Assembly: GCA_950097015.1 (NCBI GenBank)
Contig: CATNEN010000010.1
Span: 3,162,001 to 3,226,000, forward strand
Reading direction: 5' to 3'
Source: Macrostomum hystrix
Taxonomy: Eukaryota > Animalia > Platyhelminthes
DNA: 64,000 nucleotides
The translations under genes were made by a program, and so were the position numbers. Under the pieces are notes generated by a model. The model did no database searches. It was not told the DNA's origin and saw only the letters and a list, made by a program, of their open reading frames with translations. This document shows, in pieces, positions 27,393 through 63,642 of the stretch. The number at the start of each line of letters is the position of its first letter. The first letter of the stretch is position 1.

Positions 27393-27424
<32 letters not shown>

Positions 27425-28630: not shown

Positions 28631-28782
28631 CTCGCAAGCAATTAATAGAAAAGTAGTCACGAATTGACCTTGACCTGTCTAACTCTGAACTCTGAAACAG
28701 TTTAATTTTGTTTCTTTGACATTGTTATTGTTATGCCATGGCTATTTTCCTTATGTATACGCGTGTACATGCATACTGTATA

Positions 28783-29057
28783 CAGAGGCAGATTTAGGGG
28801 GGGGGGCGGGGGGGCAGTCGCCCCCCTAAATTTTAATCATGGGAATAAGATGCCCCCACCAGGGGCGCCAGTCGCAGCACTGGCGCTCCTTTTCGGCCGC
28901 TGGCGCCCCTTTTTCAGCCGCTGGCTCCCGTTTTTCAGCCACTGGCGCCCTTTCTTGGCTCCTGGCGCCCTTTTTCGGCCGCTGGCACCCCCTCTGTGAT
29001 TCTCATGGCGCTCCCCTGACAGACCGCCCCAAAACAAAATTCCTGGATCTGCCACTG
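28783..29057. mobile_element. 275-bp hAT-type MITE nested in Helitron copy 1
   Basis: TIRs CAGAGGCAGATT / GGATCTGCCACTG with 8-bp TSD ACTGTATA at 28775-28782 and 29058-29065. Confidence 0.85.
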
Positions 29058-29935
29058 ACTGTATAGAGGAGTGGCTAAGAGACATGTTTCTAAAGAAGTA
29101 ATCAAGAGGGGGCTGTTTGGACAAACTTTTCACTTATTTTTTACTTAAAACGCCCTTAAACAAACTCTTCACTTTTCATTAATGCAGTAAATAAATAAAT
29201 GGTGACCTTCACTATAAAGTTAATACAGAGACGTGAATTGCTTACTGCTTTGCTTTAAATTTCTGCCCCAAAAACAACGGGCAAAAAAAGCTAGTATCTA
29301 TATATATAAAAGTGAAAACTCTGTCTGTCTGTGTGTGTGCAACCTTTTGTCTTTATAGACGCCGAAACCGCTCAACCAAATCGCACCAAACTTTGCACAT
29401 ACCTAAAACCACCTACGCTGAGTGCAATAGGCTACTCAAATTCCCGAAAAATCATTTCCTTCCTGCTCAAAAGTGCAAAAAACTGCTCAAAAATCGTCAA
29501 AAAATCACTCAATTCGACATATCGTCGCCCCACTTCGTCAGATTTTCTCCAAATTTGATCCACTTACACTTTACATGTTTTCCAACAATGCTGTCAATTT
29601 TGAACATCTCTACTCAATCCAGAGCAAAGCTGCATCATCTCAAAGTGAGTCACTTTTTGTTTTCCGAGGACAGCCACCCCAACTCCCCTCCGCCACTCTG
29701 CGGGCCAAATTTTATTACAGCCACCCCCTCCCTTCCCCGGGCGCCGAAGCCCCAGACTGTACATTGTATTTCAAGCCGTGAATGTACACAGCCCAAACCC
29801 CTAGACTGTCTACTGGCCCCCAAGCAGCACTGAGACTGAGTGCGGTGAGTGCGGTGGCGTCCCAGTGCGCAGGGCTCTCCGGTCGATATTTCTCTCCAGC
29901 CAGCCTGGGATAGAAGAAAGAGAGAGGCTGGCGTT

Positions 29936-30550
29936 GACTGGCTGTCAGAGAGGGCAATTCTGTGTCCTAGAAATGATGCCGCCAACGAAATTAACTGCCA
30001 ACTGCTTCAGGAGTTGCCAGGTGCAGTTTTCACCTACAAGTCAATTGATACAACGTTGACTGATGACACCGCTGTGGAGTATCCTGTTGAGTTTCTGAAC
30101 TCTCTAGATCCTCCTGGAACTCCATCGCACAACTTGCAGCTGAAAGTTGGGGCACCAATTATGCTCCTCCGCAACCTGAATGCGCCAAGGCTGTGTAACG
30201 GCACCAGACTGATAGTCAGGCGGCTCTTCCCACACGTGATTGAGGCCACGATAATGACTGGATCTGGCAGAGGAGAGTCTGTGTTCGTTCCCCGGATTCC
30301 AATTATCCCCACGGACCTGCCATTTCAGTTCAAGCGACTGCAGTTCCCTGTGAGAGTGTGCTTTGCGATGACTATTAACAAGGCTCAGGGACAGTCGCTG
30401 AAGGTGGCTGGCATCAACCTGGAGACTCCTTGCTTCTCGCATGGGCAGCTTTATGTCGCCTGCTCCCGTGTTGGAACTCCAGCTGGCCTATTCATTTTCG
30501 CACCAAGGGGAAGAACGAAGAATGTGGTGTATCCCCAGGCCTTGAGGTGA
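29936..30550 (+). pseudogene. Helitron PIF1-like helicase, C-terminal fragment (copy 2)
   Basis: Same motifs as copy 1; ends VVYPQALR. Confidence 0.93.
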
Positions 30551-30702: not shown

Positions 30703-30977
30703 CAGAGGCAGATTTAGGGGGGGGGGCGGGGGGGCAGTCGCCCCCCTAAATTTTAATCATGGGAATAAGATGCCCCCACCAGGGGCGCCAGTCGCAGCAC
30801 TGGCGCCCCTTTTCGGCCGCTGGCGCCCCTTTTTCAGCCGCTGGCTCCCGTTTTTCAGCCGCTGGCGCCCTTTCTTGGCTCCTGGCGCCCTTTTTCGGCC
30901 GCTGGCACCCCCTCTGTGATTCTCATGGCGCTCCCCTGACAGACCGCCCCAAAACAAAATTCCTGGATCTGCCACTG
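30703..30977. mobile_element. hAT-type MITE nested in Helitron copy 2
   Basis: Same TIRs and ACTGTATA TSD as the copy at 28783. Confidence 0.85.
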
Positions 30978-40562: not shown

Positions 40563-41247
40563 TATATACCTGCATGTATAGCATTTACTACTCCACCAGC
40601 CACACCAACTAAGCTCTTGGGACGGAAGATAATTTTATCACTGACATGATAAAATTCTCTAAGTCCGTAAACTCGAGTTTAAAATTATATAGATGTCAGA
40701 GGCCTGCTATATGTGATGGATGTCGATTCGCAAACTGACTTGACTGTGAATAGACTCAAATGCTGATGATTGTTGATGGAGGTATTTTCGCGAAAAGTGT
40801 ATTTATCGTTCGTGTATTTATTATGTATTTATATAAAATTAAAGTTGGTATTTGATTAACACATCTAAGTATTCAAAGTCGACAGTTCATGATGCCTGCA
40901 AATTTTTTAAACTACTTTTACATACACTAGCTCTCGTTCACCTACGTGGTAATATTCAAAGCATAAGACAGTTTGCCGTCTCTATTGACAATATATTGTC
41001 GCGTTCACCATTAATCATAATCAGATGACTGATGAGATCAGTCAGTCAGTAATAAAATATTAATACGCTAACACAGATGTGTGCAGCTAGTCAATCGGTT
41101 ATTAATAATACTGTTATTATTAAATTTCACCAATACATATATATAAAGTATAAATATATGTAGAATTTCATTGATTAAACAAATGATCGTGCTATTCTAC
41201 AATTAGTCTGATTTGCAAAGTCGCGAGAGCAAAAATAAACGTGTAAA

Positions 41248-41628
41248 CTATAATACATAAAATTCTGTATAAATTCTGTATTTTACAGCATTCATTGTTC
41301 GATGTACCAGTAGCGAACTCCATGTATGATGAGCTGTCATATGATACCAGTCATGTATGATACCAGTCACGAACAAGACAGCCTTATAGTCTTCTGCTGA
41401 CCGGTGCTGTTGCAGCCATTCTTGAGTGCGCCGTAATAATAAGCATAACTCATTAGCGCTATACTCAGCATTTGGAACACCGCGCTGCAAACTAGGTAGC
41501 TGCTCGAAGCACCCTCGATGCGCTATGAACCGGCCAATGCAATCTATGCGACAGCTGAGAAAGAGTTGAAATATGTGCGGGTGAAGATACATTTGCACTA
41601 ACTGCATCTGATGGGCAATGAACGACAT
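41248..41628 (-). pseudogene. Orphan helical protein family H, copy 1 (frameshifted C-terminus)
   Basis: Near-identical to 61735-62115 for about 90 aa. Then 69 bp are replaced by a 25-bp ATGATACCAGTC-type filler, shifting the frame. Confidence 0.7.
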
Positions 41629-41890
41629 GTTCAGTCAGTTAGTAAATCAAGCCAGCATAAAGCTAAAAAATAGTTAATTAAAAAATATTTTAAACTTGAA
41701 TCAAAGTCCCCATAGAGTATACTTTAGCAAACACAGCTGAGTCAGTCCACAGACAAATCAAATGAATACAGGCCAGTCTGGGAAATAAGAACAAGAAATA
41801 TCTTATCGGCCAAGAAATCAGCCCACAACCTACGCCACAGCAGCAGCAGCAGTAGCAACAGCTATTAGACTAATTGAAGACTAATTGAAA

Positions 41891-42282
41891 ATGGCAAGCA
41901 GCAGCAACAACAACAGCAGCAGCTGTTTTCATTTGTTCCCCGCGGCCTTCCGGGAACACGTCCTGGACTCCGCTGCAGCGGAGTTGGAATCCGCCCTACA
42001 TGATGCGAATAGCGCCGCGAGTTCATTGGCGTCAGCGGAGGCCTGGGCGCCCGGACGTCGCGGGGCGGAGGACGCGATGGCCGCAGCTATGCGGCGGGTC
42101 AGGGCGGACATGGTCCGCATGGCCCGGGCCCGCCGCATAGCGGCAGGGCTGGATCCATATGTGAGTAGTAGATTTCGATTCCTTTCATTTGAATATTTAT
42201 GAACTCATCTGATAACATCTGAGCTAACAAAATAAATGGAACCTAAAACCCATCCTTCATCCCGCAGCCGGGTGTGCTATGA
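41891..42282 (+). CDS. Orphan Ala/Arg-rich helical protein family R, copy 1; exons 41891-42160, 42268-42282
   Basis: Homolog of 62357-62739 (LFPAAFR..VL.SAAAELE...AEAW.P.RR.AE..M.AA.RRVRA.M.RMARARRIAAGLDPY). Donor TAT|GTGAGT and acceptor CCCGCAG|CCG GGT GTG CTA TGA are conserved in both copies. Confidence 0.72.
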
Positions 42283-43044
42283 GTGATCTGTAGCATGAGC
42301 ATTGAGGACCCGGTAAACCAGAAACCAGAAACCAGAACCAGAAACAGAAGCTGATTGATGAGAACTGATTGATTTGAATTGAATTGAATTGAATTGAATT
42401 GAATTGAACTGAGCTGATTGATGAGAATAAAATATAAAATATTGTTTGTTAGAGTTTTCACAATAAATAACTTCTTATCTTGGTTATTTATTTTATCATT
42501 TAAATAATATGAACTGACTGGCGGTTATGTGGTGTACATTGGCGATGAGACATACTACAATAGCGACGTAATCGTAATTGATCAGTCTGCAATATAATTT
42601 CAAGTAAAGTTTATACAAGTTTCTCATGTAAAAAAACATTAATAAAAACGGATTCGTTTAAAAAAGTAAAGTACAAACGCATAATAATATAGTATAATAT
42701 AATATATGCGCGCTGGATTGATGAACCACATCTCGACTGTGACATTGATTGCGTGTAGGAGACGACTAGTTGTAGCATGATAGTTTCGCTGGATTGCTTT
42801 CCTACGGCTAAAATGCGATGCGTTCTCTTCTACACAGCAATGACCCTTGAACCAGATGTCGCCGACATTGTCTAGTTGCTTGTACATGTGTTCAGATGCA
42901 ACGTGGTAGTCTGGGCCAGGCCAAGCTAAAAGTCGAGATTGAATTCGCCGAAATTGCATTTGAATTCGCACTGGTGAGGTGTCTATATGTTGCTAAAATC
43001 GCAGCAATTTAAATTCGGCAGTACTTCTCTATCCTGTTTTCAAA

Positions 43045-43726: not shown

Positions 43727-43989
43727 ATGTCAGCATTTCGTGGCCGTGGTAAGAAGGCTCGTGTGGATGCCAGCATTGCTACATCGGATTCTAATGGTCT
43801 ACGCCAGACTAGGATCGTGGACTACTTTAGATCTGAGCAGTCAACCGATCGTCCTACTGGCAACTCAATTAGACCGAGTGGGCAAGCAGCATCGGCATCA
43901 TTCGCAGCACTGGCAGGAACGGCTGGCCGGGCATCGGCTGCCTTCAATGTTCCCCGCCGTGCAGCAGTAGTACAGCAGCAACAGCAACC

Positions 43990-44023
<34 letters not shown>

Positions 44024-46366
44024 ACTGTTATTACAACCGCAGTTCAGAAGCGTCGACGTGTCCGATCGACTCTACGCAAGCGGACGCGTGTAGTTGTCGA
44101 CTTGGATGCTTCGTCTAGCACTACATCGTCGTCTGATGCTGAAGACACTGGCGTTGGATCTTTGGTAGCCATGCGACAGCCTCTGGTTATTGCCGCACAA
44201 TCAATTGGTGGCGCCGGCGACCATGCTAATCGCATAGAGTCCACGCCTAAAGTGCTATCATCTGAAGATGACTCAGCGGACGACTTGCTAGCAGACGACG
44301 TACAGCTGGAGATTGTGGACGAGTGGACGAGCAATACAGACAATGTAGAGTCGAATACTGCCCCTGTTTTGACGGCTTCTAATAGTTCAGCCTTGTCATC
44401 GCAGCTAGTCGATGATAAGTACAAAACGGAGGTGGCAGAATTATTGCGCGCAAATGGCGAGTCGACTATTCCTAAAAATAGTGCCGCACTTGGTGCCTGT
44501 CCGACTTCGCCAGATTATGCGCCTCGCTCTACACCGGCAATGTCTGTCATCGAGAATGGGACAATATCCGATGATGATGAACCAGCTCTCGCAGTATTTT
44601 CTCCAGCGTATGTCGACGCTTTTGAATCAACAGCGCAACAGTCGGGACGACGGCAGCAATCGCAGCAGCAGCATCATCAGCGAGATCAACAACCGCAGCA
44701 GCGGCAACAGCAGCAGCAGCAAGTTGGTGGCGTGGCATTTGCTCCGATGAATATGCGTTGTGTCGTTCGACATCACCACTTCTATGTCCTCGAGCTCCAA
44801 TTACCGACTACGCCTCTTTAACAGCAGAGGGCAGGTCGGTTCTTATGACTAGAAGGACGCTACATCTTATAGAGATTGCATTCATCTCGAGCGATGTGGA
44901 AAAATTCAAGGCGTTTCTAGAAGATGAATTGGTAGCTCCATGTGCACAGTTTGCCATCGGCGCAACATCATGTATTCAAGTTGACATGCTGACCAGCGAA
45001 GAAATCCGAGCGCGTCGTCAGCAGAAATACAACATGTCAATCCGTGAATGTTTAGGAGCTCCGAATCATCCCAATGGTTTGCTGATGTTCCTGAACCTGC
45101 GCCAACCAGAAGATGGTTACACTGTTTACTGCGGACTGCATGCCCTTTTGATGGAATCTGCGGAAGCTTCGGCCTACCTGCATCCTACAATGTGTAGAAT
45201 GACAGTGTCTGGTGTACGCAGTGCGTCAAGTGCAATTAAGCTAGTTACCAGTACGGACGAGTTTCCAGCTCTTTTCCGCGTTTCTACTCAAGAGTGCAGC
45301 TTGCTGACCAAGGCCTTTTGCTGGGTTGCTGCTCATGAGACGTCATCTACTGAGCCTTTGCTAGATAGTGGCTTCATGTTCGAACACTTTCGTGTCAGAC
45401 AAGAGCTCAGCGATTACTTTAAGGTGACTCAGATGAAACGCGTAATAGCAACAGAGGTGCTAGCTGGTTGCCAAAACTGTCGCCCTACTGCCGCTGCCGC
45501 CGCCGCCGCTGCTGATGATGCTGCAACAGCCGACTATGCGAGGACGACCTTGCCTACTCAGCTGGAGGTATGCAAAATATTATAATACATGACATTTTTA
45601 GCACACGTACGAGTATTGATCATTGAATTTTTGCTGTTGTTTTAATTCAAATAATTATTACTTTTGGACAATTAATTAATTAATTGTATGCGAACCTACC
45701 TAACAACACAACACCATCCAACAGGTCTCTGCTGCTGCTGATGTTGCTGCTTCCGCTGCTACTGCTGTTCAAGTACTTGATGCCGCCGTCGCTCATGTTC
45801 CCCGGCTGATCGCCGCCGCCACCAACGTGTGCCCAACTGTAAAGGCTGTGTGCAGCGCGTTACAATCGCCAACTGGTGTCGTCTATCTATACGGCCCGTC
45901 TGGCGTTGGGAAGACCCACTCTGTGCAAAGCCATCTCGGTTCTACGAAAGTGCTGAATATCCAGGTGCAGAAGCGGTCTAACACGTTTATGTTTGACAAG
46001 CTCTGCGAGACTATACACACTGCCATGTTTATTGACGAGCTACGCCCGCAACTGTTTGATGACACATCTGAAGTCATGTGCACACTACTTCGTTTGGTCA
46101 ATGGAGACACTTTTGAAGTCAATGCTAAATACAAGGCTATTCGACACGTCTCTTGGCTCAATCGACTGTTAGTGCTTGCTGGGCATGCTCCGGTCAGTGC
46201 GTATTCGATGGACTTTCAGCGCCGATTAGAACCGACACCTGATGGGCACAAGCGTCCGGTAGTTGCCATCTTCATTGGTCATTCCCTCAGTACCGACTAC
46301 CAATGCGATGGACAATGCCACCCAATACGCAATGTGTTTGGCGATCACCCGGACCGGCGAGTATGA
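43727..46366 (+). CDS. Rep-like protein 1: low-complexity N-terminus (PIP box, NLS) + unknown conserved domain + SF3 helicase; -1 frame break near 44608-44633; intron 45568-45724
   Basis: GPSGVGKT (Walker A), MFIDE (Walker B), LLRLVNG..FEVNAKYK (B'), LVLAGH (motif C position) and FQRRL (Arg finger). Phase-0 intron GAG|GTATGC...CAACAG|GTC joins 44758-45567 to the helicase ORF. The middle domain aligns with Rep-like protein 2. Confidence 0.8.
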
Positions 46367-46729
46367 GCGACAAGACGGTGCTGTTAGCAGGTTTTTTTAC
46401 ACCAAACTGCCTGCATGCTGCTATTTTATCGACTATATTTTTACTCGGTCATTCAGTCAGTCTTTCAGCTGTTTTTTTATATTTTTTGCTGTTTCATACT
46501 GTTTTTGTATGCAATTTTATAATTAGTCATACAAATAAAATCAATTTAAATGCTCAGTTTTGAGCTTTTATTGTTGTGAAGTAGGTAATTGCTACTTCTG
46601 TTGCAAAAAATCATATTTCTTGCTAATTGTAGTCAATTGACTGATTAATGAAGCCCAACACGAATACAATAAATGTATTGAGCGTTTGCATGCATAAAAA
46701 TACAAACAATAGTTACGATAATCAGTAGA

Positions 46730-46860
46730 TTTATAATATAACTGCATAATGAATCATAGTGATTGTATTATTTTACATTCTGACGTTATGACGCCTCTGC
46801 TTCCTTCAACTGTGGCATACAAAAGCTCGTCCTCAACTGGGTCTTATGTGCAATTTTTCT
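46730..46860 (-). pseudogene. Single-unit remnant of the acidic-repeat gene at 59972-60532
   Basis: Reads DPVEDELLYATVE versus DPADDELLYAAAE; the downstream AT-rich flank (ATAACTG.A.TAATGAATCATAGT) is also shared. Confidence 0.65.
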
Positions 46861-48257: not shown

Positions 48258-48633
48258 CGACCCGCTTTGCTATAATTCTAAATTGATGACTACTGATAGC
48301 AATTGTTGCAGTGTTAGGTGCGAGATCGGTTGGCTGATTGAATACATATACCTGTCATGATAATTTTGTTTCAAATGGCGCAGTTGTGACAGCAGCGGAA
48401 TGCAGTTCGAACATTCTATGAAATGAGTTTCATGCAGGGTATTATCTTACGTTACATGATGACTGCAGCCCCATGCCACTGCCCGCACCTGAGTTAGGGA
48501 CCCATTTCGCACTGTGATGATCGATCGAAATTTTTCCAATATACTGTGGGATATATAGTGACTATAGCGGTATTAGCTAGTGTTAGACGCGTTGCTGCTG
48601 CACTCACGACATTGTTGGGTGCGTAGAACCACG

Positions 48634-49053
48634 ATGAATGCTCATCCTGTGGCGCTGTTCGGCTCGCCGGCCATCGTGGCACTCCTGGCCAGATGCGACA
48701 TCGCCTGCCTGGCCCCGTTCCTGGCGCACCGAGGACGACTGGAGCAGCTGACCTGCCTGCAGCGCCACTGCCCGAATGCTGAGCTGAATGCCACCCAGCT
48801 ACACACCTTGCTGAAGAGCCTCCTGGACTGGCTGCTACAACACCAGACAGCTGCGGGCTACGAGACCATCCTGGAGGTGACCTGCCTAACAGAGAACGAG
48901 GCTTTCGACTTGGCCGAGCTGCTAGGCCTGCTGGAGGACACCTGTTCGGAGCTGCAGCACATTCTACACGGGCTGGACTACTGGCGCGGCGTGCAGCAAA
49001 TTGCTAGACTGCGAGAGTTGCTCCGGAGTCGCCAATATCGAATGGAGCAGTAG
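48634..49053 (+). CDS. Orphan helical protein family H, copy 2 (139 aa, GC-rich divergent paralog)
   Basis: CDIACLAPFLAHRGRLEQL..LQR..PNAE.NA..L..LL.....WL..H..A..Y...L.VT.....EA.D..E.L.LLE....ELQ.I.HG..YW aligns with 61735-62115. Confidence 0.8.
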   Translation: MNAHPVALFGSPAIVALLARCDIACLAPFLAHRGRLEQLTCLQRHCPNAELNATQLHTLLKSLLDWLLQHQTAAGYETILEVTCLTENEAFDLAELLGLLEDTCSELQHILHGLDYWRGVQQIARLRELLRSRQYRMEQ

Positions 49054-49218: not shown

Positions 49219-49351
49219 AGTACAGTTCGTGGTGCGCGCACAATCCCTAAGAAATATATACATAAGACGATGCGAGGTGCTTATCTACCTAAAAATAGCA
49301 GGCAAGTCCTTATATATTTTTAAGTAATGTGCGCGCACTATGAACTGTACT
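49219..49351. repeat. Inverted-repeat cassette (~40-bp imperfect arms, ~50-bp spacer) upstream of Rep-like gene 2
   Basis: AGTACAGTTCGTGGTGCGCGCACAATCCCTAAGAAATATATA ... TATATATTTTTAAGTAATGTGCGCGCACTATGAACTGTACT. Confidence 0.88.
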
Positions 49352-49649: not shown

Positions 49650-52442
49650 ATGTCGTTCAACTTTTCAACCGGCTGCGACAGCGACGATGAGCGAATTGCG
49701 GCCGCGCTGGACGAGTTTGAGAGAGTTGCCCAAGATAGTAACTCCGCCGGGCCGGTAGCGTCATCAACTCGCCAGCCACCATCACAGCGAAAAAGAAAGA
49801 GCGCTCCCTCTCAACGTCGGATTGTCAATGCAGCAGCCGCAGAATCTACGCCAGGCCCAAAGCGTATATATACTTTCACCCCAGTGCAGACAGCAGCGGT
49901 GGCTAACATCAGCAGCGACGCCGACGACTTCAGCCTGCTGCCATTGAGCGGTGTCATGCGCCTAAACACTGGAGAGCAGCAGCCTGCCAGTGACCAGATG
50001 TCCACAGGCAATCAGCAGCCACCGCCTGCCAGTATATCGGCCGTCTACGCGCCCATCTCCCACGCGATGGCAGCCTCAGCCTCGACTGCGCCAAAAGGGA
50101 GCATGCTGGCTTGGCTCGGAGATCAGCACCGGAGTGCCAAGAAGGCCACCAGCAGATGGTCATCGCCGGCAGCGATCAGGCACGTCAGGCGACATGCTCC
50201 TGCCAACTGCGGCGATGGCGACGGGGCGGCGTCTGATGCGCCCGACATGTCCACGGCAGCCCTACAGCCTCGCAGCCCCGTCGTCATCGAGATTGAGGAC
50301 GTCGACGACGAGCGCGCCGATAACGGCAGGCCGACAGCGGCAACTCGCACAAAGGCGGAGCCATCGGAGCCTAACGAGCAGGAGGCGGCGATGGATAGCG
50401 ACGACCGCGATGCTCTGCAGGCACTGCTGGACTACGAGGCGTCCACCGTTGCGCTGTCAGTCGCTGCAGATCCCCCACCGTCGGGCGCTGATGCGGAAAT
50501 GGAGGAGGCCGCCAGCACGGTGCCGAAACCGCCTCAAGTCGCGGCCGACCAACAACAGCAGCCAGGGAGGCGGAGATTCCGTTTCCAGCGGCTCGAAACG
50601 ACTGCTCCCGCTGTTGCTGCTGCTGCCGACTGCTCCATTGTGGGCGCCATGGTGCCAGACTCGCAGCCCGATGGCCGACGATTAGCAGTCGCCAAGACCA
50701 CACCGTCTCAGCGTCCGGAAGATGAGACGACGGCCTACGTGGTGTCGCCTGGCACAGCGGCATTCGCAGCAGCCGTGGTGGCCGCTATGAATGAGGCCAG
50801 CCAGTCCGTCCCTGTCGGCGAGGAGTGGTGGCGCATATTAACACCACAGCCGCTGCAGCAACAAGAGCAGGTGCAGCTCGAGCGTCCTCCCTCGCTGGTG
50901 CCCTTCAGCTACAGTCCGCCGGCGTCTGCGGCACAGCTTATTCACTTCCTCCAGCAACAGCAGGGGGACAGCGAGGCGAGCGGGAGCGGGGTCGGCGGCG
51001 CCAGAGGACAACGAGGCGGCCGAGGGGTGCGACGGCTGGGCCAAAATCCGCTGCTTAATGCGGCAGCAGCACAGCAGCAGTTCACTGTGACGCGCTCAGT
51101 CAGCCGGCCGCTCGCAATGACCGGTGCTGCTCCTGCGGAGCGACTGCCCGAGGACAGCGGCATTCTGACCGGGCGCCGCTATTTGCACGTCTTCCACATC
51201 GACAAGGTGCGCTTCGTCGGTGAGTCACTTGCTTTGTTCATAAGCTCTGAATCATATAACCAGCTGCTGGCATCCACTGTTTGCATGCTGCCTACATAAA
51301 CAGGTCGTGCCAAAGTATATCTGGGCGAGGCTCTGGAGGCACACTGTGTCGAGCTCGTCCTGGCGTCCAGCCCGGGCCTCTGCGTCGGCATGGATGAGTT
51401 CTGCGACCGGCGGCTAGTCGCTGACCCGCTCTCCGTCGACGAGATGGAGCAACAGCAGCAGCAGCAGCAGCACAGCGAGTATCGGCCACACCGCACTCTG
51501 TCCGGCTTCGTGCGCCTGGAGACCAACGCGGCCGGCTGGCATTTGTACGAGCTGCTGTTCAGCCTGCTGCCTAGCCGAGACGAGGGACGCTGCTTTGTGG
51601 TGCCCGACCGGACCACCCTGACGCTGTGCGGCGTCCGCTCGCCAGACAGTGTGCTGCGGAGCCTGACGCAGCACGACGGCTACCCGCTGCTGATCGGGAT
51701 CGGCGCCACGCAGTGCAGCATGCTGGTGCAAGCGACTCGGTGGGCGCTGTCCTACCCGCTGACTGCCAACCTGCCCGACCAGACTGACGGCTTCTTGTTG
51801 GCCCACCAGCAGATGCGCGCCACGTTGCTGGGGGTCTTTAGAGACGTGCAGCGCCAGCGCCGGATTCGCAGGGAGCAGCTCGCCGGCTGTTCCGCATGTT
51901 CCACCGAGGCTGCCGACATTAGGAACCTGTGCCCGCTCCGAGAGGCCGTCTGCACAGCCCTTCGCCACCAGTCGGGCGTTGTGTACCTTTACGGGCCGTC
52001 GGGAGTCGGCAAGACCACCGCCGTCGAGCGCCACCTGGGCCAGGAGCGCGTCTTCTGTCCGGTCATCAAGCGCTTCGGTGGCAATGACTTCATGTTCGAC
52101 GGCCTGGACACCGCGCGCCACTCCGTCATCTTTCTGGACGAGGTGCGGCCGCACATGTTCGAGGGCGGCGACCTGGAGACCACGCTGTTGCGCCTGCTGA
52201 ACGGCAACAGCTTCCTGGTCAATGCGAAGCACCAGGCGCACGTCTACCTGGACTGGGGCCAACGGCTGGTGATCATGGCCGGCCACGCCTCACCTGACGA
52301 CTACCCGGCTGACGTGCAGCGGCGCCTGCGCAACGAGGGCAACACGTGCGTCGAGGTCGACCACGACATCGAGGCCTGCCAGGGGGGGTGCCGCCAGCAG
52401 CCAATGTTCGGAGCCGCCGCCGCCAACGCCCAGGTTGAATGA
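49650..52442 (+). CDS. Rep-like protein 2: acidic/low-complexity N-terminus + unknown conserved domain + CxxC..C...C + SF3 helicase; exons 49650-51219, 51304-52442
   Basis: Phase-1 intron GTC G|GTGAGT...AAACAG|GT joins the two ORFs in frame. Motifs GPSGVGKT, IFLDE, LLRLLNG.SFLVNAKHQ, VIMAGH and VQRRL are present. Confidence 0.87.
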
Positions 52443-53937: not shown

Positions 53938-54052
53938 GTACAGTCTGTAGTGCGCGCACATTCCCTAAAAAATATATAAGGCATGTCAGCTCTAATTTTA
54001 GAACGACGATCCTTATATTTTTTAAGTATTGTGCGCGCACTATGAACTGTAC
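53938..54052. repeat. Inverted-repeat cassette, second copy of the 49219 type
   Basis: GTACAGTCTGTAGTGCGCGCACATTCCCTAAAAAATATATAAGG ... CCTTATATTTTTTAAGTATTGTGCGCGCACTATGAACTGTAC. Confidence 0.88.
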
Positions 54053-54512: not shown

Positions 54513-57382
54513 TCAATCAAAATTATGCTCCGCCACTGAGTGCAGCCGCCGTCGCTTTCCGGCCACCGGTCTACCGTGCAGGACTGCGTCGGCTCGTTGG
54601 GTGCTCGCCGCCACCTCCCCACTTCCACCAGCCAGGCTGCTGATGAGTCCCTGGGTCGGCGGCCTAACTATTGGTCGCATCTCTGCGTCACCTGATGGCA
54701 CCACAAACCGGCGGACAATATCGCGGCTGCGAATTACTGTGCCCATCTCGGTGGCCATCTGGGCATTGTGCCCATAATTGTACCGGATGACAGCTGCAGA
54801 TGTGCCGTGCGCTCTGGCGAACATATCCAGCTGCTCCGGCTCCATCATGAGCACTACGGCACAGAGGGTGCGACGCCAGTGCGTGGCCACATAGTGCCGA
54901 CCCAGTACTCGCTGCCCGCCTGCGCTGATCATGCGGCTCATTGCCGACTGGCTGTACACACCGCCGAACACATCAATGAAGACGGTCGGCGACTCCGGTT
55001 GCTCGATGCCGCGAGCAGCAAGCGACGGCACGATATATTCGTCGTGCAGGCGCAGCAAGGCCTCGCAGAATAGATCCGGCAGCACCATCCTGGCTGGGTC
55101 GCCGGAGTGTCCGACCTTGTGCGGCACTTCACGCAGCGGCAGGACGAGATGCGAGTGCCCAGCCAGATCGGCAGCGGACGGCCCGCTCTCCCCATCTGCA
55201 CTTTGCGTGTGTTGGCGGAACAGCTGTTTTTGGTCGGCCGACGCGTTTCGCCGAACCGAACGGTCGACCAGGTGTCGCCGACGGATGTAGATCCACGGCA
55301 GGAGTCGCAGGGGCTGCTCAATGCTGCAGTAGAACAGCATCTCCTGCACAATCCTCCGCAGACAAACCATCCGGCGACTGAAGGCACCATCATCTGCTTC
55401 GCCGTTGTCTTTGGTGACATCAGCGATGCCATCAGCGACCACACCTGCTGCCTGCATGCCCCATTCGCCGTCGACTGGCAGCAAAGTCCAGCTGTGCCTT
55501 TGTAGCATGGCAAAAAAACGATCACGGCGGGCGAACACGGCATCGACCTCGTCCACGTTGACGTAGGTGTCCATGAAGGCCACCTGCCGCTCGTTGTGGC
55601 CAAGCTTGTAGACTGCCTGCATAGTATAAATGTGGTTGCGTTTACTTATAGTAGATAGCAGCACGAAACCAAATAGAACTAACTGTCATTAATGCAGCTG
55701 CTGTGCAGCTAGCTCACCTGCTGGATGGCGCGGACGTTGCCGAACTCGCCGCGAGCCTGCTGCACCACGCTGCTAAGGCGGGCGATGAGAGCCTGCTCAG
55801 CCGCCAGCGGGTTGTTGGCCTTCTGCGCCAACTGCATTCTCCAGCAGACGCCACTGCCGACAGAGTCGACGTCCTCAATAGCAGGGCGCTCGCTGTCAGG
55901 CGAGGGTGAGTCGATGCTGCAGAACAGCTCGGCTTCGCGCAAGCCAACGGCGGCCATGATGGCATTGGCGCCTCGCAGGCCCCTCACGCGCAGCCAGCCC
56001 TCCATGCAGCGGCAGATGCTGACAAGCTCCTGGCACTTGCGCGCAGCAGTCGACTGGGCCAGCTGCATGGCATCACCGACTGTTTCAGCGCTGAAGCAGT
56101 CCTGCACCCTGTCCGGCTGAAGCAGCAGGTCTGCAAGCGATATGCCCGCTCGCTGCCAGGTGCGTAGAAGCGTCGAGCTCACGGACCTGCTGATGTCGCG
56201 CCAACGCTGCTGGTGGCACAAGTTGGCCGCAATCCTGGCCCGCGATGGGTCCCTCCACCATAGCTCCCGCAGGCGTTCCACCGTTGCGGAGATGCTGGGC
56301 CGGTCACCCAACGGCTGCAGCAGCTCTGGTGGCACGGGCTTCGCAGGTGGCGACGTGCGAAAGTGTCGACAGCGCGGACCGCGACGCTGTTGCTGCTGCT
56401 TCTGATCGGCTGTCGACGCTTCCTGCTGCAGTTCTGCTCCGAAGATGGACAATCGAAGCCGGTCGAATTCGGCATTAGCCAGCCTTCTCTTTGCAGCAGT
56501 CCACTTTGCTGCAGCTGCTCGACGCTGCCTCGGCGGGGTAGCTGCCAGCTTCACTAGCGGCCTCTGTGCAGCTGACAGCACAGCCGATGACGTGCTGGGA
56601 CGACAAAGTGCTGCCTTGGTGGCCTGCACCGCCAACTGCAGACAGGCAGCCGAAGAGGAAGACTCTGCTGCCACCGTCTGGACCGTCGGCAGCGTCCGCA
56701 TTCTGATGCTGGTTCCGGGCAGCAAGCCGACATCGTCATCTCCATCATCGTCATCGTCAGCGACTACGGGGGCCTCCTGTGAGGACATCAGCAGCAGCGG
56801 CGCAGTCGGGTCAAATAGGCGTCGCCGGACGGCTGGACGGCTGGCTGACAACAGCCGAGCACTGGCCGCTGACTGTCGACCGTCAACGGACGGCGCGGCG
56901 ATGCTGTAGAGCTCGGCCAACAGAGACCCAGCCTCGTATTCAGCTGGTTCTGCCTCTGAAGGCTGCTGCGGAGGCGGTGGTGGCATCTGCTGCGGAGGCG
57001 GTGGTGGCATCTGCTGCGGAGGCTGTGGCTGCTGGTGTTCCACAGCAACGGTAGCGACAATAGCTGGCACTGCTGGACACCTGTGCTGCCTTGCTGTCCT
57101 ACGCAGCACCTTGCCGCAGGCTGGGCACGCGTGTACATGCTCAGTGTTGGCTGAGCTGCGCGTGTGGGTGCTGCACGTCAGGCAGAGCCAGACCATCTGG
57201 GCACGCTGCTTGGCTGACGCCGCTGCCCAAGATGCCTCGGACGGCCGCACCTTGACTGGGGCATCCTCGAGTCGGAATTGGCGCACAGCCTCCTCCGCGT
57301 GCCTCCTCAGGAAGTGGCGTTTCGGGTGCGTCTGCGGTCTGCCGTCGCCACAGAAGATGCAGCACGACTCGTTGTCTGTCAT
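54513..57382 (-). CDS. Zinc-finger tyrosine recombinase (~920 aa); exons 57382-55718 and 55616-54513
   Basis: C-terminal catalytic pattern: R (IEQPLRLLPW), K (VPHKVGH...RMVLP), VFIDVFGGVYS, HxxR (THWRRT), ARAHGTS..VIRYNY (GTS variant, Tyr nucleophile). Phase-0 intron CAG|GTGAGC...ATGCAG|GCA. N-terminal CIFC..H....H, CLTC and CPAC..H.C zinc fingers. Confidence 0.8.
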
Positions 57383-58499
57383 AGCTATTGTTATTACAAA
57401 TTGATGCAGTGCCATATAGGTGTATGAACTGAATTCAGTATGCATGCAACACATGCTATATACAGTCCGTTGTGCGTGCATCTAAATAAATATATATATG
57501 CCCCTTTATCCCATTATGGAATACACTATTTTAAGTGTTGTGCGCGCACATTGTCCCGTACTGTTGTCATCGCTGCTGCATTTATATTCGATTGAGTGCT
57601 GCGTTGAGCACATAAATCACTTATTTTTCTGTTGTCCCTAACAACAACAACAACAACAACAACATCCCGGCTGTAAAAATTATAAGCCTCTGAATCATTT
57701 ATAAATTTTAAAAACAAAATTTTTCATTTGCAATGTAGTACAATCAGCTCAGACATTCGATTTTCCAGTGAACAGCACACCCACCCCCTCCAACTCGATC
57801 TTCCTCCCTCAAAAGCAGTGCCGAGCCAGCCAGACAGACCTGCAGATGGAAAGAGAGACGACTTCGATCGTCTTCAGTCTATGGCCACAGGGGTGACATT
57901 ATCGATTGGTTAAAGCAGACACACTGCTTCTCTTTTTCAAGGCAGAGCAGTGGCCTTCCACACCCTTTTACCATAGACTATGAATTTAGAGACAGGGCCG
58001 CCCCCTTTCGCTTTCGAAGGTTTAAAGAAAGGGTGGCAAGCAAAGTAGCAGTCTTTTAGTTTTAGCCCGGCCCAACTGCTCGATCGAACTGCAGCTTACA
58101 GTCAAATATAATTCAGAGATTCATCCACAATTCGAATCAACAGTCTGCCTTCTATTTGCTTGGACTATATTAAAACAGGCTACAGATATAATATCGACAG
58201 AGAGCCACAGGATCTATTATTATGTCAACAGCAAGCATTAGGATCTAATATATTTCTAGGCAGCTCAGAACTGCATAACACTTACAGAGATTACTAATAT
58301 ATTATAATTATAGAGAACTGCATGCGCTATTATCTATTAGATTAACAGACCGATTGTTATATGTATACAAATACTAATTGAAGGGCCTATTATATATACA
58401 AAGACTAATCTGAGGGCCTATTATATTAACACAGCTTGTAATGCATATTTATGAACAGATACTTATATGGCCTATTTAAAATACATAGCCTTTTTCTTA

Positions 58500-59120: not shown

Positions 59121-59971
59121 TTTCCGTGTTTTTTGCTTGTCGTCGCTGCCGCCGCCAGTCAAAGTTAAATCAAATTATTGAATGTCATAAGACATAGAGT
59201 CTGTGTCAATCAGTGTCAATCAGTCAGTCAATCGATCTCGAACGAAACAATACATTCAGTATACTGTACACTGCTGCTGCTCTAATGCAATATCAATAAC
59301 GAGAGAAAAAGAGTGCTTGCGAGCAAAGCCATAGAGGAAGCGTGGTCTTCCCAGTTCTAAAAATAGCTGCAGAGCTAGCGCGTGAATTTAAATACGCGTG
59401 AATTTAAATACACTGTTTACGTTGCTATAAACGAGAGAAGATGAAAGTGATTTTAGGAAGGCCTTAATGTTCATTTTTTGTCTTAATCTGACTTCCGAAT
59501 AAATAAATCTAAATAGTAAGCTAAATGGAGCAGAACTGAACTGCTGCGCACTGAAATATAAGCGCTATACGAAAATTGCTATTTGCGTTTCAATGAGGCC
59601 CAAATGGCTCTCCGAAAAGACCGAATAATGAGTCGAAAAAAGCTGGGCAAAAATCTGAAAATTAGGAAAGTATAGTGACATATTTTTGCGAAAGAACATG
59701 TTCTAAAACAAATACAAACTGCTGTATTTATGCGAAATTGCATTGAGCATTAAAATAATATGAACGTTTACAAACAAAAAAATACAAACAATAATGCTTA
59801 CGTTTGTGCTTATGATTGTTGGTGATGGTATTTTCACGAAAAGATTAGTGTATTTTCAATCACTAACAAAACAACACCAATATGTATATCAAATCGTTAT
59901 GATAATCAGAGGCTTTATTTATAAAATAACTGTAATGAATCATAGTTTCTGCATTATTTTATAATATAATT

Positions 59972-60532
59972 TCAAACGTATGCCTCCGCCTCTTCAGCTG
60001 CGGCATACAATAGGCAGTCGTCAGCTGGGTCAAATAAACAGCTACTGGCTGCCATCGCTGCCGCTGCTGCTGACGCCTCCGCCTCTTCAGCTGCGGCATA
60101 CAAAAGCTCGTCATCAGCTGGGTCAAACAAGCAGCTACTGGCTGCCATCGCTGCCGCTGCTGCTGACGCCTCCGCCTCTTCAGCTGCTGCATACAAAAGC
60201 TCGTCATCAGCTGGGTCAAATAAACAGCTACTGGCTGCCATCGCTGCCGCTGCTGCTGACGCCTCCGCCTCTTCAGCTGCTGCATACAAAAGCTCGTCAT
60301 CAGCTGGGTCAAAGCAATTGGCTGCCATCGCCGCTTCGACCTCTTCAGCTACGGCGTATAACAAATGGTCGTCTGCCAGGCCGAATACAAAACTGTATGT
60401 TGAATTGTATGTTTCATCATACCCGTAGTCATCATAGCCTGGCTATTCATTCAGCTCAACGTCATCGTCGTGACAGTTGGATTTTTCCGCATCGTTTAGA
60501 GTTGGCCCTGATGATGATGTTGATGTAGGCAT
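59972..60532 (-). CDS. Acidic tandem-repeat protein (LFDPADDELLYAAAEEAEASAAAAAMAASSC x3-4, 90-bp units); one in-frame TAG near 60443 after ATG 60532
   Basis: The repeat preserves the frame and amino-acid motif. The upstream frame MPTSTSSSGPTLND...LNE*PGYDDYGYDETYNSTYSFVFGLADDHLLY continues into it. Confidence 0.6.
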
Positions 60533-61224: not shown

Positions 61225-61734
61225 CAATTCTTTTGTTAAGCACTGTTGCCATTAGTTATAATGAAATTAATTAACTGAATAATATAATTAAAAGTTGGTA
61301 TTTGATTAACACATCTAAGTATTCAAAGTCGACAGTTCATGATACCTGCAAATGTTTTAAACTACTTTTACATACACTAGCTCTCGTTCACCTTCACGTG
61401 GTATATTCAAAGCATAAGAGTTTGCCGTCACTATTGACAATATATTGTCGCGTTTACCATTAATCATAATCAGACGACTGATGAGATCAGTCAGTAATAA
61501 AATATTAATACGCGAACACAGATGTGTGCAGGTAGTCAACCGGTAATTATTAATACGGTTTTTATTAAATTTCACCAATACATATAGAGTATAAATATAT
61601 ATAGAATTTCATTGGTTGAACAAATAATCGTGCCATTCTACAATTAGTCTGATTTGCAAAGTCGCGAGAGCAAAAATAAACGTGTAAACTATAATACATA
61701 AAATTCTGCATATAAATTCTGTATTTTACAGCAT

Positions 61735-62115
61735 TCATTGTTCGATGTACCAATAGCGAACTCCATGTATGATGAGCTGAAGTTCAGCTTGGGCTTCCTC
61801 TAAAAGCTCTAGCACTTCGATGATGTCTTGTGCTTCATCGTCTCTTACACCAGTCACGGACAAGACAGCCTGATAGTCTTCTGCTGACCGGTGCTTTTGC
61901 AGCCATTGTTGAGTGCGCCGTAATAATAAACATAGCTCATTAGCGTTATACTCTGCATTTGGAACACCGCGTTGCAAACTAGGTAGTTGCTCGAAGCACC
62001 CTCGATGCGCTATGAACCGGCCAATGCAATCTATGCGACAGCTGAGAAAGAGTTGAAATACGCGCGGCTGAAGATACATTTGTACTAACTGCATCTGATC
62101 GGCAATTAACGACAT
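61735..62115 (-). CDS. Orphan helical protein family H, copy 3 (126 aa, intact)
   Basis: ATG..stop intact; homologous to 48634-49053 and 41248-41628. Confidence 0.8.
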   Translation of the reverse strand: MSLIADQMQLVQMYLQPRVFQLFLSCRIDCIGRFIAHRGCFEQLPSLQRGVPNAEYNANELCLLLRRTQQWLQKHRSAEDYQAVLSVTGVRDDEAQDIIEVLELLEEAQAELQLIIHGVRYWYIEQ

Positions 62116-62356
62116 GTTCAGTCAGTTAGTAAATCAAGTAAAGCAAAAAATAGTTTTGTCTAAAAAAATTCTAAACTTTAATCAAAGCCCACATAGAGTA
62201 TATTTTTTCGAACACAGATGAGTCAGTCCACAGACAAATCCAATGAATACAGGCCAGCCAGGGTATTAAGAACAAGAAATTTTTTATCGGCCAAGAAATC
62301 AGCCCACAACCAAACTTCGCAAGCAAAGCAGCAACAACAGCACAACAACAGCAGCT

Positions 62357-62739
62357 ATGTCTACTTTCCCATTATTCCCGGCGGCGTTCCGGCACTACGT
62401 ACTGGCGTCAGCCGCCGCCGAGTTAGAAGACGCAATGAGATCAACCATGGAGGTGGCAATGGAGGTAGCGGCGGCGGAAGCCTGGACGCCGGAACGGCGC
62501 CGGGCTGAAGAAAATATGACAGCCGCTATACGGCGGGTCCGGGCGGCCATGTTACGCATGGCCCGGGCCCGTCGTATAGCGGCAGGGCTGGATCCATATG
62601 TGAGTAGTAGATTTTGATTCCTTTCATTTGAATATTTATGAACACATCTGAATTGTAACATCTAAGCTACTAAAGGAAACCTAACAAAATAAATGAAACC
62701 TAAAACCCATCTTTCATCCCGCAGCCGGGTGTCCTATGA
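62357..62739 (+). CDS. Orphan family R, copy 2; exons 62357-62599, 62725-62739
   Basis: Homolog of 41891-42282 with the same donor and acceptor and the terminal PGVL*. Confidence 0.72.
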
Positions 62740-63642
62740 GAACCAGAGAACCTGGTTCAACACCAACAACACCAGCCGATCTGAGACATTCAATCGTTTC
62801 TCTTTGATAACTTTACCTCCTTTGTTATCTTACTGTCAATACTGATTGGTCATACATCTCTGATACTGATACTGAAACGGATACATAAATAAATCAAAAC
62901 AATAAAACTGATTAAATGATTGAATGATTAAATTATTCATGCTAATCTCGTCAATACGTGTTATGAATCGTTCTGTTATTTTATTACGTCTATTATTAAC
63001 ATTTGTGCGACAATAAGAACTCACTAACTGACAAGCAAAAAGAAACGAATTTTCGAGATGCATTATTCCTTGTACATTATTGTACATTATTGTACATTAT
63101 TCAGCCATATAAGTTAGTTGGATAAGTTTGAAAAAGTAAAGTACAAACGACGAATAAATTATTATACACTTTCGTATCGCTAAATATAAGATGTTACAAG
63201 ATGCACTTTTAAAACGTGCAGACTATAGGTATGTAGTGCATTAAATTGTGCGTATTTTACCAAAGACATGTCTGCTTGGTACAGCTCGATTTTTCGCTAT
63301 TTTTTATGTTCTTCGCATCCAAATTTTTCTTTCGAAAATACAGTCAGATGTTTTTGGCCGTAGACACAAAAAACGGCTGCATATAATTCATATTGTATGC
63401 AGTATTTTTGCAAAAGTTCTTTAAGTAGCGTGGCCATATCTATGGTATTTTCGCGAATATAGCCAGACATTTCATCTATAATTAGTATTTGCGCACTGCC
63501 AAAAACTTTTTCGCGAAAGTACATACGTATTCTTAAGTCAAAACGACTATGATCGTTGACTACTTGAGATCTGTGCATATTGTGCCAGTGGTAAAAAGGT
63601 AAGAAGGCTCTTGTGGAAGACAGTATCATTAGCCATCGTTAC

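What the first reader, a model, noticed from the sequence alone, without database searches (positions are those of the whole stretch)
54513..57382. Intron-containing zinc-finger tyrosine recombinase with the GTS variant of the second His/Trp motif
Seen: the two large minus-strand ORFs join in frame through a canonical 101-bp GT-AG intron (55717-55617) into a ~920-aa protein. It has three Zn-finger-like clusters, a long low-complexity linker, a helical region that could be the core-binding domain, and the R...K...HxxR...HGTS...Y pattern. Established: R-K-H-R-H/W-Y is the YR catalytic set, and a GTS..(M/V)I..Y variant occurs in some phage integrases. Inference: an active eukaryote-adapted YR, larger than typical Crypton YRs, that mobilises the surrounding region.
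Basis: partly seen in the sequence, partly recalled or inferred. Interest (0 to 1): 0.85.

Follow-up and report, generated by a model that had tools for sequence, protein, structure and literature searches.

The report
Orphan tyrosine recombinase gene in flatworm-like genome
The two reverse-strand reading frames form one spliced gene for a ~920-residue zinc-finger protein whose C-terminal domain has the fold and key residues of a tyrosine recombinase, although no sequence database model recognises it, and it sits beside an AAA+ ATPase gene in a unit that looks like a new kind of DNA mobile element.

Summary
ORFs 55709-57481 and 54513-55664 (minus strand) join in frame through a 101-nt GT-AG intron (55717-55617). 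An intron-less homologue in Macrostomum lignano reads straight across the same point.

No Pfam, NCBIfam, PHROGs or PDB sequence search recognises the protein. An exhaustive search of 1.84 billion proteins found only 7 relatives, from flatworm and environmental eukaryotes. AlphaFold2 of the family's C-terminal domain (pLDDT 79, pTM 0.74) gives a tyrosine recombinase (YR) / topoisomerase IB fold. All top 50 PDB matches, and 49 of the top 50 viral-structure matches, are of that kind.

Arg, Lys, Arg-Arg and Tyr fall on the canonical structural elements with canonical spacing. The second His/Trp position is an invariant Thr. The His of "HxxR" occurs only in the window copy; relatives have Asp or Thr.

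The gene is paired with an AAA+ ATPase gene, as it is in M. lignano. Three copies of a ~110-130-bp palindromic unit bracket the two genes.

Best reading: a probably active recombinase of an undescribed Crypton-like element family. Activity and mobility are untested, and one M. lignano copy has lost both the first Arg and the Tyr.

The parts
55718..57382 (-). Exon 1 of the recombinase gene. It holds the N-terminal zinc-finger-like motifs, a long low-complexity linker and a conserved helical region. An alternative upstream ATG lies at 57481.
   Evidence: ORF; coordinates. Collinear with M. lignano P0011 and L003 17651-16174. The ATG at 57481 lies inside palindromic unit U3, so 57382 is the likelier start.
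55617..55717 (-). 101-nt GT-AG intron, phase 0.
   Evidence: Sequence. The intron-less M. lignano ORF is collinear across the junction.
54513..55616 (-). Exon 2, the tyrosine-recombinase-like catalytic domain plus a disordered tail. The stop codon is at 54513-54515.
   Evidence: AF2 and Foldseek on this exon give tyrosine recombinases as the ten top hits. The high-confidence model of the homologous domain gives the same fold.
57299..57364 (-). Zinc-finger-like motif 1 (CxxC-x11-H-x4-H).
   Evidence: Conserved in P0011 as CPVC...H....H.
57077..57184 (-). Zinc-finger-like clusters 2 and 3 (CLTC..H.H and CPAC-x10-H-x-C).
   Evidence: The CPAC cluster has a counterpart (CPHC...H....C) in P0011.
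55718..56275 (-). Conserved helical region (RLRELWW ... STAARKCQE ...), a candidate core-binding domain.
   Evidence: Conserved in P0011, L003 and L004. Its fold was not modelled.
55305..55307 (-). Candidate catalytic Arg I (R104 of exon 2; R659 of the spliced protein).
   Evidence: Aligns with P0011 model residue R96, at the N-cap of helix 97-102. Arg in 4 of 5 family members and Ser in L003.
55116..55118 (-). Candidate catalytic Lys (K167 / K722) in the EVPHK motif.
   Evidence: Lies in the loop between the two modelled beta strands (121-126 and 142-147 in the model). Lys in 6 of 6 members.
54870..54881 (-). H-W-R-R (H246, R248, R249): candidate His I and Arg II.
   Evidence: RR is invariant and lies at the start of helix 212-226 of the model. 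Window HWRRTLCA parallels lambda Int HELRSLSA. The His is unique to the window copy.
54774..54803 (-). T272-S273 ... Y281 (T827 ... Y836): Thr at the His/Trp position and the candidate Tyr nucleophile.
   Evidence: TS is invariant. Tyr is present in 6 of 7 members and is Asp in L003. The T-to-Y spacing is 9, as for lambda H333-Y342 and Cre W315-Y324.
49650..52442 (+). Neighbouring gene with a disordered N-terminal half and a C-terminal AAA+ P-loop ATPase domain (~51855-52439). It has an 84-nt GT-AG intron at 51220-51303. It is convergent with the recombinase gene.
   Evidence: 70% identical to M. lignano BOX15_Mlig013629g1. The same convergent pairing and the same intron position occur in L003.
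49220..49350 (.). Palindromic unit U1: two ~39-nt inverted arms, each with the core GTGCGCGCAC.
53938..54052 (.). Palindromic unit U2, lying between the 3' ends of the two genes.
57460..57565 (.). Palindromic unit U3 (left arm degenerate), ~80 nt upstream of the ATG at 57382.
42714..42911 (-). Decayed fragment of a second recombinase gene of the P0011-like subfamily.
   Evidence: tblastn with P0011 residues 497-562, 33% identity, E 2e-6.
43727..46366 (+). Diverged paralogue of the AAA+ gene, next to the recombinase fragment.
   Evidence: P-loop domain 48% identical to the 51.9-52.3 kb copy.

Best explanation
The locus encodes a sequence-orphan tyrosine recombinase (YR) about 920 aa long.

Domain order:
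- two or three N-terminal zinc-finger-like modules;
- a disordered linker;
- a helical region that probably acts as the core-binding domain;
- a C-terminal catalytic domain with the integrase/Cre fold.

Inferred mechanism: the zinc fingers and helical domain bind specific DNA. Tyr836 attacks the scissile phosphate and forms a 3'-phosphotyrosyl intermediate. Arg659, Arg804 (or 803) and Lys722 stabilise and protonate the transition state. His801 (Asp in relatives) may act as general base. Thr827 replaces the usual His/Trp contact to the phosphate.

The gene travels with a convergently transcribed AAA+ ATPase gene. I interpret the pair as the core of an undescribed Crypton-like element: a DNA element that depends on a YR and has no reverse transcriptase. 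The three palindromic units bracketing the two genes are candidate recombination sites.

Shown: the gene model, the fold, the residue placement, and the pairing of the two genes in two or three independent loci.

Inferred: catalysis, the role of the ATPase, the sites, and mobility.
For: Gene model:
-.

Fold:
- AF2 used only family sequences and no templates. It gave pLDDT 79.3 and pTM 0.74 for the homologous domain of P0011.
- In Foldseek against the PDB, all 50 top hits are YRs or topoisomerase IB: XerA, S. aureus integrase, Cre, XerD, Tn1549 Int, XerH, lambda Int and YopR. E-values start at 1e-3 and probabilities reach 0.99-1.00.
- In Foldseek against BFVD, 49 of the top 50 are integrases, VLF-1 or uncharacterised viral proteins; rank 48, a capillovirus polyprotein fragment at probability 0.18, is the one evident mismatch.
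- The window's own exon-2 model has low confidence (pLDDT 51), yet its ten best hits are also YRs.

Residues:
- R at a helix N-cap, K in the beta-hairpin loop, RR at a helix start, and TS in a loop followed by Y nine residues later.
- Spacings match lambda Int and Cre, read from their real sequences.
- R, K, RR, TS and Y are conserved across the family.

Constraint:
- dN/dS is about 0.19 against the M. lignano copy, although dS is saturated.

Element-like behaviour:
- The same YR + AAA+ pair sits at a locus with different flanks in M. lignano.
- A decayed YR fragment of another subfamily lies next to an AAA+ paralogue in the window.
- M. lignano has several near-identical P0011-type proteins.
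- Both gene families occur in the same environmental sample.
- No reverse transcriptase or other transposase was found nearby.
- The palindromic core occurs 5 times against 0.09 expected, and only around these two genes.
Against: - No sequence-level link to any YR family. Pfam (PF00589, DUF3504 and DUF3435 included), NCBIfam, PHROGs and PDB sequence searches are blank. hhalign against a phage-integrase profile is not significant.
- Foldseek TM-scores are only 0.3-0.4.
- The high-confidence model is of a 29%-identical homologue, not of the window protein.
- The His/Trp position is Thr, and the Glu usually found after Arg I is Pro.
- The closest homologue (L003) lacks Arg I and Tyr, so at least some lineages are inactive.
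- Only one intact copy is visible. Element ends, target-site features and copy number are unknown.
- The palindromic units are absent from the M. lignano locus and could be unrelated MITE-like insertions.
- M. lignano is polyploid-like (from memory), so near-identical proteins there need not mean transposition.
Confidence: 0.5

Rival explanations
1. A domesticated, immobile host gene pair derived from an ancient YR element. The YR-fold protein would now serve as a zinc-finger DNA-binding or chromatin factor, or as a host site-specific recombinase. This would parallel the DUF3504 genes (ZMYM, KCTD1, QRICH1) derived from Cryptons.
For: - The gene has a spliceosomal intron, host-like composition and long low-complexity linkers.
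- The two-gene unit and the intron position in the AAA+ gene are conserved between the window and M. lignano, with dN/dS well below 1.
- The M. lignano copy lost Arg I and Tyr yet keeps a long ORF across the catalytic domain. Domesticated Crypton YRs show the same pattern of lost catalytic residues in conserved genes (PMC3212892).
Against: - The window copy and most relatives keep R, K, RR and Y.
- Flanks differ between the two loci.
- A decayed fragment of another subfamily lies 12 kb away.
- Several divergent lineages (25-55% identity) coexist, with a patchy distribution.
Confidence: 0.25
2. A remnant of an integrated episome or virus-like element. The YR would be its integrase and the P-loop protein its SF3/AAA+-type replicative helicase.
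For: - The ATPase domain gives sub-threshold matches to the SF3-helicase models RNA_helicase (PF00910) and DUF5906 in 3-4 of 4 family members.
- Pairing an integrase with a helicase is common in viruses and plasmids (general knowledge).
- The BFVD structural hits include giant-virus, virophage, phaeovirus and nudivirus YRs.
Against: - No capsid, polymerase or other viral gene is nearby.
- No relative of the recombinase was found in IMG/VR; the ATPase was not searched there.
- Both genes contain spliceosomal introns.
- The only ATPase model that passes its curated cut-off is generic AAA, PF00004.
Confidence: 0.12
3. Not a recombinase at all. The R...K...HxxR...Y pattern would be a chance match in an unrelated helical domain.
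For: All sequence-based family searches and profile comparisons are negative. The first AF2 model was poor.
Against: Two independent models return YR-fold proteins almost exclusively as top hits, in two structure libraries. The conserved residues fall on the expected elements with canonical spacing.
Confidence: 0.05

Closest known systems
Crypton DNA transposons (CryptonF/S/A/I; Goodwin 2003; Kojima & Jurka 2011, PMC3212892)
   Same: A eukaryotic element whose only recognisable recombination enzyme is a YR, with no reverse transcriptase. It can carry a second gene, and domesticated or inactivated derivatives exist.
   Different: - No detectable sequence similarity to the Pfam models that cover Crypton-type YRs (PF00589, DUF3504).
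- N-terminal zinc fingers.
- Thr at the His/Trp position, and Asp/Thr instead of His in most relatives.
- The partner gene is an AAA+ ATPase, which the two papers read do not list among Crypton second genes.
- Element ends are undefined.
Prokaryotic and phage tyrosine recombinases (XerA/XerD/XerH, Cre, lambda Int, Tn1549 Int)
   Same: These are the best structural matches. R, K, R and Y lie in the same order and on the same elements, with the same 22-23 and 9-residue spacings before the Tyr.
   Different: - 10-16% identity in the structural alignments and TM-scores of 0.3-0.4.
- About three times larger.
- Zinc fingers and disordered linkers.
- A spliced eukaryotic gene.
- Thr replaces His/Trp.
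DIRS / Ngaro / VIPER YR retrotransposons
   Same: They encode a YR and use repeated terminal or internal complementary sequences. The three palindromic units here are loosely reminiscent of the DIRS inverted terminal repeats plus internal complementary region.
   Different: No RT, RNase H or methyltransferase gene lies in or near the unit, and there is no PF00589 match.
Starship 'captain' YRs (DUF3435) of fungi
   Same: A large eukaryotic YR that is hard to recognise by sequence and mobilises a multi-gene DNA element.
   Different: No DUF3435 match; animal rather than fungal host; a small two-gene unit rather than a cargo-rich giant element.
AAA+ transposition regulators MuB / TnsC / IstB
   Same: A P-loop AAA+ ATPase encoded next to the recombinase gene. 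There are weak matches to TnsC and to a phage 'DNA transposition protein' family.
   Different: Those proteins partner DDE transposases in bacteria. The matches here rest mostly on the P-loop and are not significant.

Membership tests
Tyrosine recombinase / topoisomerase IB superfamily (DNA breaking-rejoining fold) | Catalytic-domain fold | tested here: met
   AF2 model pLDDT 79.3, pTM 0.74. All top 50 PDB hits and 49 of the top 50 BFVD hits are consistent with this fold, with probabilities up to 1.00. The window's own low-confidence model gives the same top hits.
Tyrosine recombinase / topoisomerase IB superfamily (DNA breaking-rejoining fold) | Arg I, catalytic Lys, Arg II and Tyr nucleophile on the canonical elements | tested here: met
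   R104, K167, R248/249 and Y281 of exon 2 were mapped through alignment A5 onto the secondary structure of the model. Spacings match lambda Int and Cre. 3D clustering could not be measured.
Tyrosine recombinase / topoisomerase IB superfamily (DNA breaking-rejoining fold) | His I (HxxR) and His II/Trp | tested here: not met
   His I is present in the window (HWRR) but is D or T in the other 7 aligned members. The His II/Trp position is an invariant Thr.
Tyrosine recombinase / topoisomerase IB superfamily (DNA breaking-rejoining fold) | Formation of a covalent 3'-phosphotyrosyl intermediate | not testable with these tools
   Requires biochemistry.
Pfam Phage_integrase (PF00589), DUF3504 (PF12012), DUF3435 (PF11917) | Score above the curated threshold of the sequence model | tested here: not met
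   No hit, even at E up to 1-10, for either window exon or for 5 relatives. hhalign of the family profile against a phage integrase + Cre profile gave probability 0.2%.
Crypton | YR-encoding element without reverse transcriptase | tested here: met
   Pfam scans of all sizeable ORFs from 41 to 64 kb found no RT, RNase H or DDE transposase.
Crypton | Phylogenetic or sequence affinity to CryptonF/S/A/I YRs | tested here: inconclusive
   No Crypton sequences were available to align. The Pfam models that cover them gave nothing.
Crypton | Multiple copies with defined ends and short direct repeats or microhomology at the insertion site | tested here: inconclusive
   Only coding regions are shared between the window and L003, so ends are undefined. 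No eukaryotic genome collection was searchable.
DIRS / Ngaro / VIPER | RT and RNase H genes in the same element | tested here: not met
   None found.

The most novel reading that the evidence does not exclude
A new class of eukaryotic DNA element in which a zinc-finger tyrosine recombinase with a non-canonical active site works with a dedicated AAA+ ATPase. The active site would be Asp/His-x-Arg-Arg plus Thr in place of His/Trp. The ATPase would play the role that MuB, TnsC and IstB play for DDE transposases. The recombinase would act on hairpin-capable palindromic sites (U1, U2, U3) that divide the element into two excisable cassettes.
Probability: 0.2. Interest if true: 0.78.

Novelty: new variant of a known kind. 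Interest (0 to 1): 0.55.

Why it matters
YR-driven elements are the least understood class of eukaryotic transposons. Annotation pipelines detect them through Pfam-type sequence models. This family escapes all of those models and is visible only by structure prediction, so similar recombinases may be under-counted in animal genomes.

A YR paired with an AAA+ ATPase appears in none of the papers I read or searched. If the ATPase takes part in recombination, it would be a new solution for target choice or regulation.

A compact, eukaryote-adapted site-specific recombinase with its own candidate sites would also be a potential genome-engineering tool for flatworm models such as Macrostomum.

Tried and rejected
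Sequence searches that gave nothing:
- Pfam, NCBIfam and PHROGs on both exons and on relatives.
- PDB sequence search with a single sequence and with a profile.
- Word-indexed homologue search with the family alignment: only two already-known members.
- The same search with the P0011 region 500-960: nothing.
- IMG/VR scans and both metagenome-contig scans. Two earlier attempts failed because the alignment was too divergent.
- Exact look-ups of the window ORF, P0005 and P0011.
- DNA for the JGI and ENA contigs was unavailable.

Profile comparisons:
- hhalign of the family profile against Cre or lambda Int alone and against an 8-sequence integrase profile built here was not significant. The short segments it aligned were, in two of the three runs, the topologically equivalent ones.

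Other negatives:
- Rfam on the window: nothing.
- The palindromic motif was not found in the M. lignano locus.
- An apparent similarity between a small neighbouring ORF ('orfY') and the N-terminus of P0011 was rejected.
- Literature searches for a described flatworm YR or Crypton found nothing.

Rejected readings:
- DIRS-like retroelement, because there is no RT.
- Chance motif, because the fold evidence contradicts it.
Full report
**1. Observation.**
The minus strand carries ORFs 55709..57481 (590 aa) and 54513..55664 (383 aa). Exon 1 ends with CAG at 55720-55718. The next bases are GTGAGC, and an in-frame TAG follows at once. The sequence ...TATGCAG ends at 55617, and GCA at 55616 continues the second ORF's frame.

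The spliced product is 922 aa from the ATG at 57382 and 955 aa from the ATG at 57481. The upstream ATG lies inside a palindromic repeat unit, so 57382 is the likelier start.

**2. Independent support for the gene model.**
An exhaustive HMMER search of exon 2 against 1.84 billion representatives found only 7 proteins, all fragments. One cluster contains a 1084-aa Macrostomum lignano protein, P0011. P0011 aligns in order with both exons: zinc finger, linker, helical region, then C-terminal domain.

The neighbouring gene led to an M. lignano contig, fetched as L003. L003 carries a closer homologue, 56% identical over exon 2 (E 1e-105). In that copy, an ORF runs uninterrupted across the point homologous to the intron. 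The window reads VRAIQQ|AVYKLGH and M. lignano reads VRSLQEQLHKLGH, with no gap. The splice is therefore well supported without RNA data.

**3. What sequence methods say.**
They say nothing.
- Pfam, NCBIfam, PHROGs and PDB sequence searches are blank for both exons and for the relatives.
- Profile-profile comparison with Cre, with lambda Int, and with an 8-member integrase profile built here is not significant.

The family is a sequence orphan.

**4. Fold.**
AlphaFold2 ran without templates and used only family sequences.
- Window exon 2 with an 8-sequence alignment gave a poor model (pLDDT 51). Its ten best PDB matches were nevertheless all tyrosine recombinases.
- A second run used the compact homologous domain, P0011 670-950, with a 9-sequence alignment that included the window, L003 and a Logan contig, L004. 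It gave pLDDT 79.3 and pTM 0.74.
- In Foldseek against the PDB, all 50 top hits belong to the tyrosine recombinase / topoisomerase IB fold: XerA, S. aureus integrase, Cre, XerD, Tn1549 Int, XerH, lambda Int, YopR and bacterial and poxviral topoisomerase IB. E-values start at 1e-3 and probabilities reach 0.99-1.00.
- In Foldseek against BFVD, 49 of the top 50 hits are phage integrases, baculovirus or nudivirus VLF-1, or uncharacterised viral proteins. The one evident mismatch is a capillovirus polyprotein fragment at rank 48, probability 0.18.

Caveats: TM-scores are modest (0.3-0.4). I could not obtain coordinates to measure active-site geometry.

**5. Active-site residues.**
Alignment A5 maps the model onto the window.

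| Role | Window residue (exon 2 / spliced) | Position in the model | Family conservation |
|---|---|---|---|
| Arg I | R104 / R659 | N-cap of a short helix (PLRLLPW) | 4 of 5; Ser in L003 |
| Lys | K167 / K722 | loop of the beta hairpin (EVPHK) | 6 of 6 |
| Arg II | R248-R249 / R803-R804 | start of a helix | invariant |
| His/Trp position | T272-S273 / T827 | loop | invariant Thr-Ser |
| Tyr | Y281 / Y836 | nine residues after T272 | 6 of 7; Asp in L003 |

I read the reference residues from the real lambda and P1 sequences.
- Arg II to His/Trp is 22 residues in lambda Int and 23 in Cre. In the window, R249 to T272 is 23.
- His/Trp to Tyr is 9 in both references. In the window, T272 to Y281 is 9.
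- Lambda Int HELRSLSA parallels window HWRRTLCA.

The His of HWRR is Asp in five relatives and Thr in two. The His of HGTS is Leu or Tyr in most relatives.

**6. Inactivated copy.**
The closest homologue (L003) has Ser for Arg I (QPISLLPW) and Asp for the Tyr (RNDGYN). It also has a frame change upstream. That copy is catalytically dead. Even so, dN/dS between it and the window copy is about 0.19 over the catalytic domain, with dS saturated. Most of their shared history was therefore under constraint.

**7. Context.**
The host is a metazoan. The window holds an amiloride-sensitive channel gene, a ZER1-like gene and Helitron-type Pif1 fragments. The nearest database relatives of both genes are from M. 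lignano, at 55-70% identity.

A gene at 49650-52442 is convergent with the recombinase gene. It has an 84-nt GT-AG intron (51220-51303) and a C-terminal AAA+ P-loop domain. PF00004 passes its cut-off on the trimmed domain. SF3-type helicase models stay sub-threshold.

The same convergent pair, with the same intron position, occurs in L003, but between different flanking genes, COG7 and EME1. Twelve kilobases upstream in the window, a decayed fragment of a P0011-type recombinase (42714-42911) lies beside a diverged AAA+ paralogue (43727-46366). Homologues of both proteins also come from one environmental sample. The two genes therefore travel together.

No reverse transcriptase or DDE transposase is nearby.

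**8. Candidate sites.**
A ~110-130-bp palindromic unit occurs three times: U1 at 49220-49350, U2 at 53938-54052 and U3 at ~57460-57565. Each unit has two ~39-nt inverted arms centred on GTGCGCGCAC. The layout is U1 - ATPase gene - U2 - recombinase gene - U3.

The 10-nt core occurs 5 times against 0.09 expected, and nowhere else in the 64 kb. These units could be recombination sites, since YR sites are typically short inverted repeats around a crossover region (PMC3212892). They could equally be unrelated MITE-like insertions or regulatory elements. They are absent from L003.

**9. Interpretation.**
I am confident (about 0.9) that this is a YR-fold protein. I am moderately confident that the window copy is catalytically competent, because all four core residues are present and the ORF is intact. 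I am also moderately confident that the two-gene unit is, or recently was, mobile. The joint statement gets 0.5.

Rivals:
- domesticated YR-derived host gene pair (0.25);
- remnant of an integrating episome or virus (0.12);
- chance resemblance (0.05).

**10. Comparison with known families.**
It works like a Crypton-type YR element. It fails the sequence-model tests for PF00589, DUF3504 and DUF3435, it lacks the canonical His residues, and it has a partner gene that none of the papers I read or searched reports for YR elements. I file it as a new variant (a new family) of YR-encoding eukaryotic elements, not as a member of any named family.

Noticed in passing
window 40833-42283 and 61282-62740: A 1.5-kb segment is repeated in direct orientation at 82% identity. 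It carries a divergent pair of small ORFs: 'orfX' at 41248-41628 and 61735-62115 (minus strand), and 'orfY' at 41885-42202 and 62357-62617 (plus strand, 69% aa identity). The two copies bracket the ~19-kb region that holds both recombinase/ATPase loci. A third, more diverged orfX (48580-49053, plus strand) sits just upstream of U1. None of these ORFs has a Pfam match.
   Followed up: partly
window 7818-13273 (also 4922-6003, 6656-7023, 13533-14252, 14684-15206, 15694-16564): A block of several different satellites, including a 32-mer repeated ~166 times (5.5 kb). They are GC-rich with strong GC skew.
   Followed up: no
window 27311-30550: Two tandem, nearly identical Pif1-helicase fragments (Pif1 2B domain, E 2e-19 each), each followed by a copy of the same 20-mer repeat array (28880-28991 and 30800-30911). 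This looks like a duplicated Helitron-like remnant.
   Followed up: no
window 3178-4590 and 18000-20372: Ordinary metazoan genes: an amiloride-sensitive sodium channel (ASC/DEG-ENaC, E 7e-24) and a ZER1-like gene in two ORFs. They identify the host as an animal.
   Followed up: partly
window 46708-46843 and 59892-60313: A 93-nt tandem repeat (3.6 copies at 59982-60313) has a related single copy just downstream of the AAA+ paralogue at 46.7 kb. This suggests the two halves of the region share more history than the coding genes show.
   Followed up: no
L003 11201-11922: In the M. lignano locus, a perfect 48-nt inverted repeat separated by 626 nt (MITE-like) lies between the ATPase and recombinase genes. 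U2 occupies the corresponding interval in the window, but the sequences are unrelated.
   Followed up: no
L004 (Logan SRR31628394 contig) 1194-1412: Another family member has an AT-rich, intron-like interruption inside the catalytic domain, between Arg I and the Lys hairpin. This position differs from the window's intron, so introns were gained independently in this family.
   Followed up: partly
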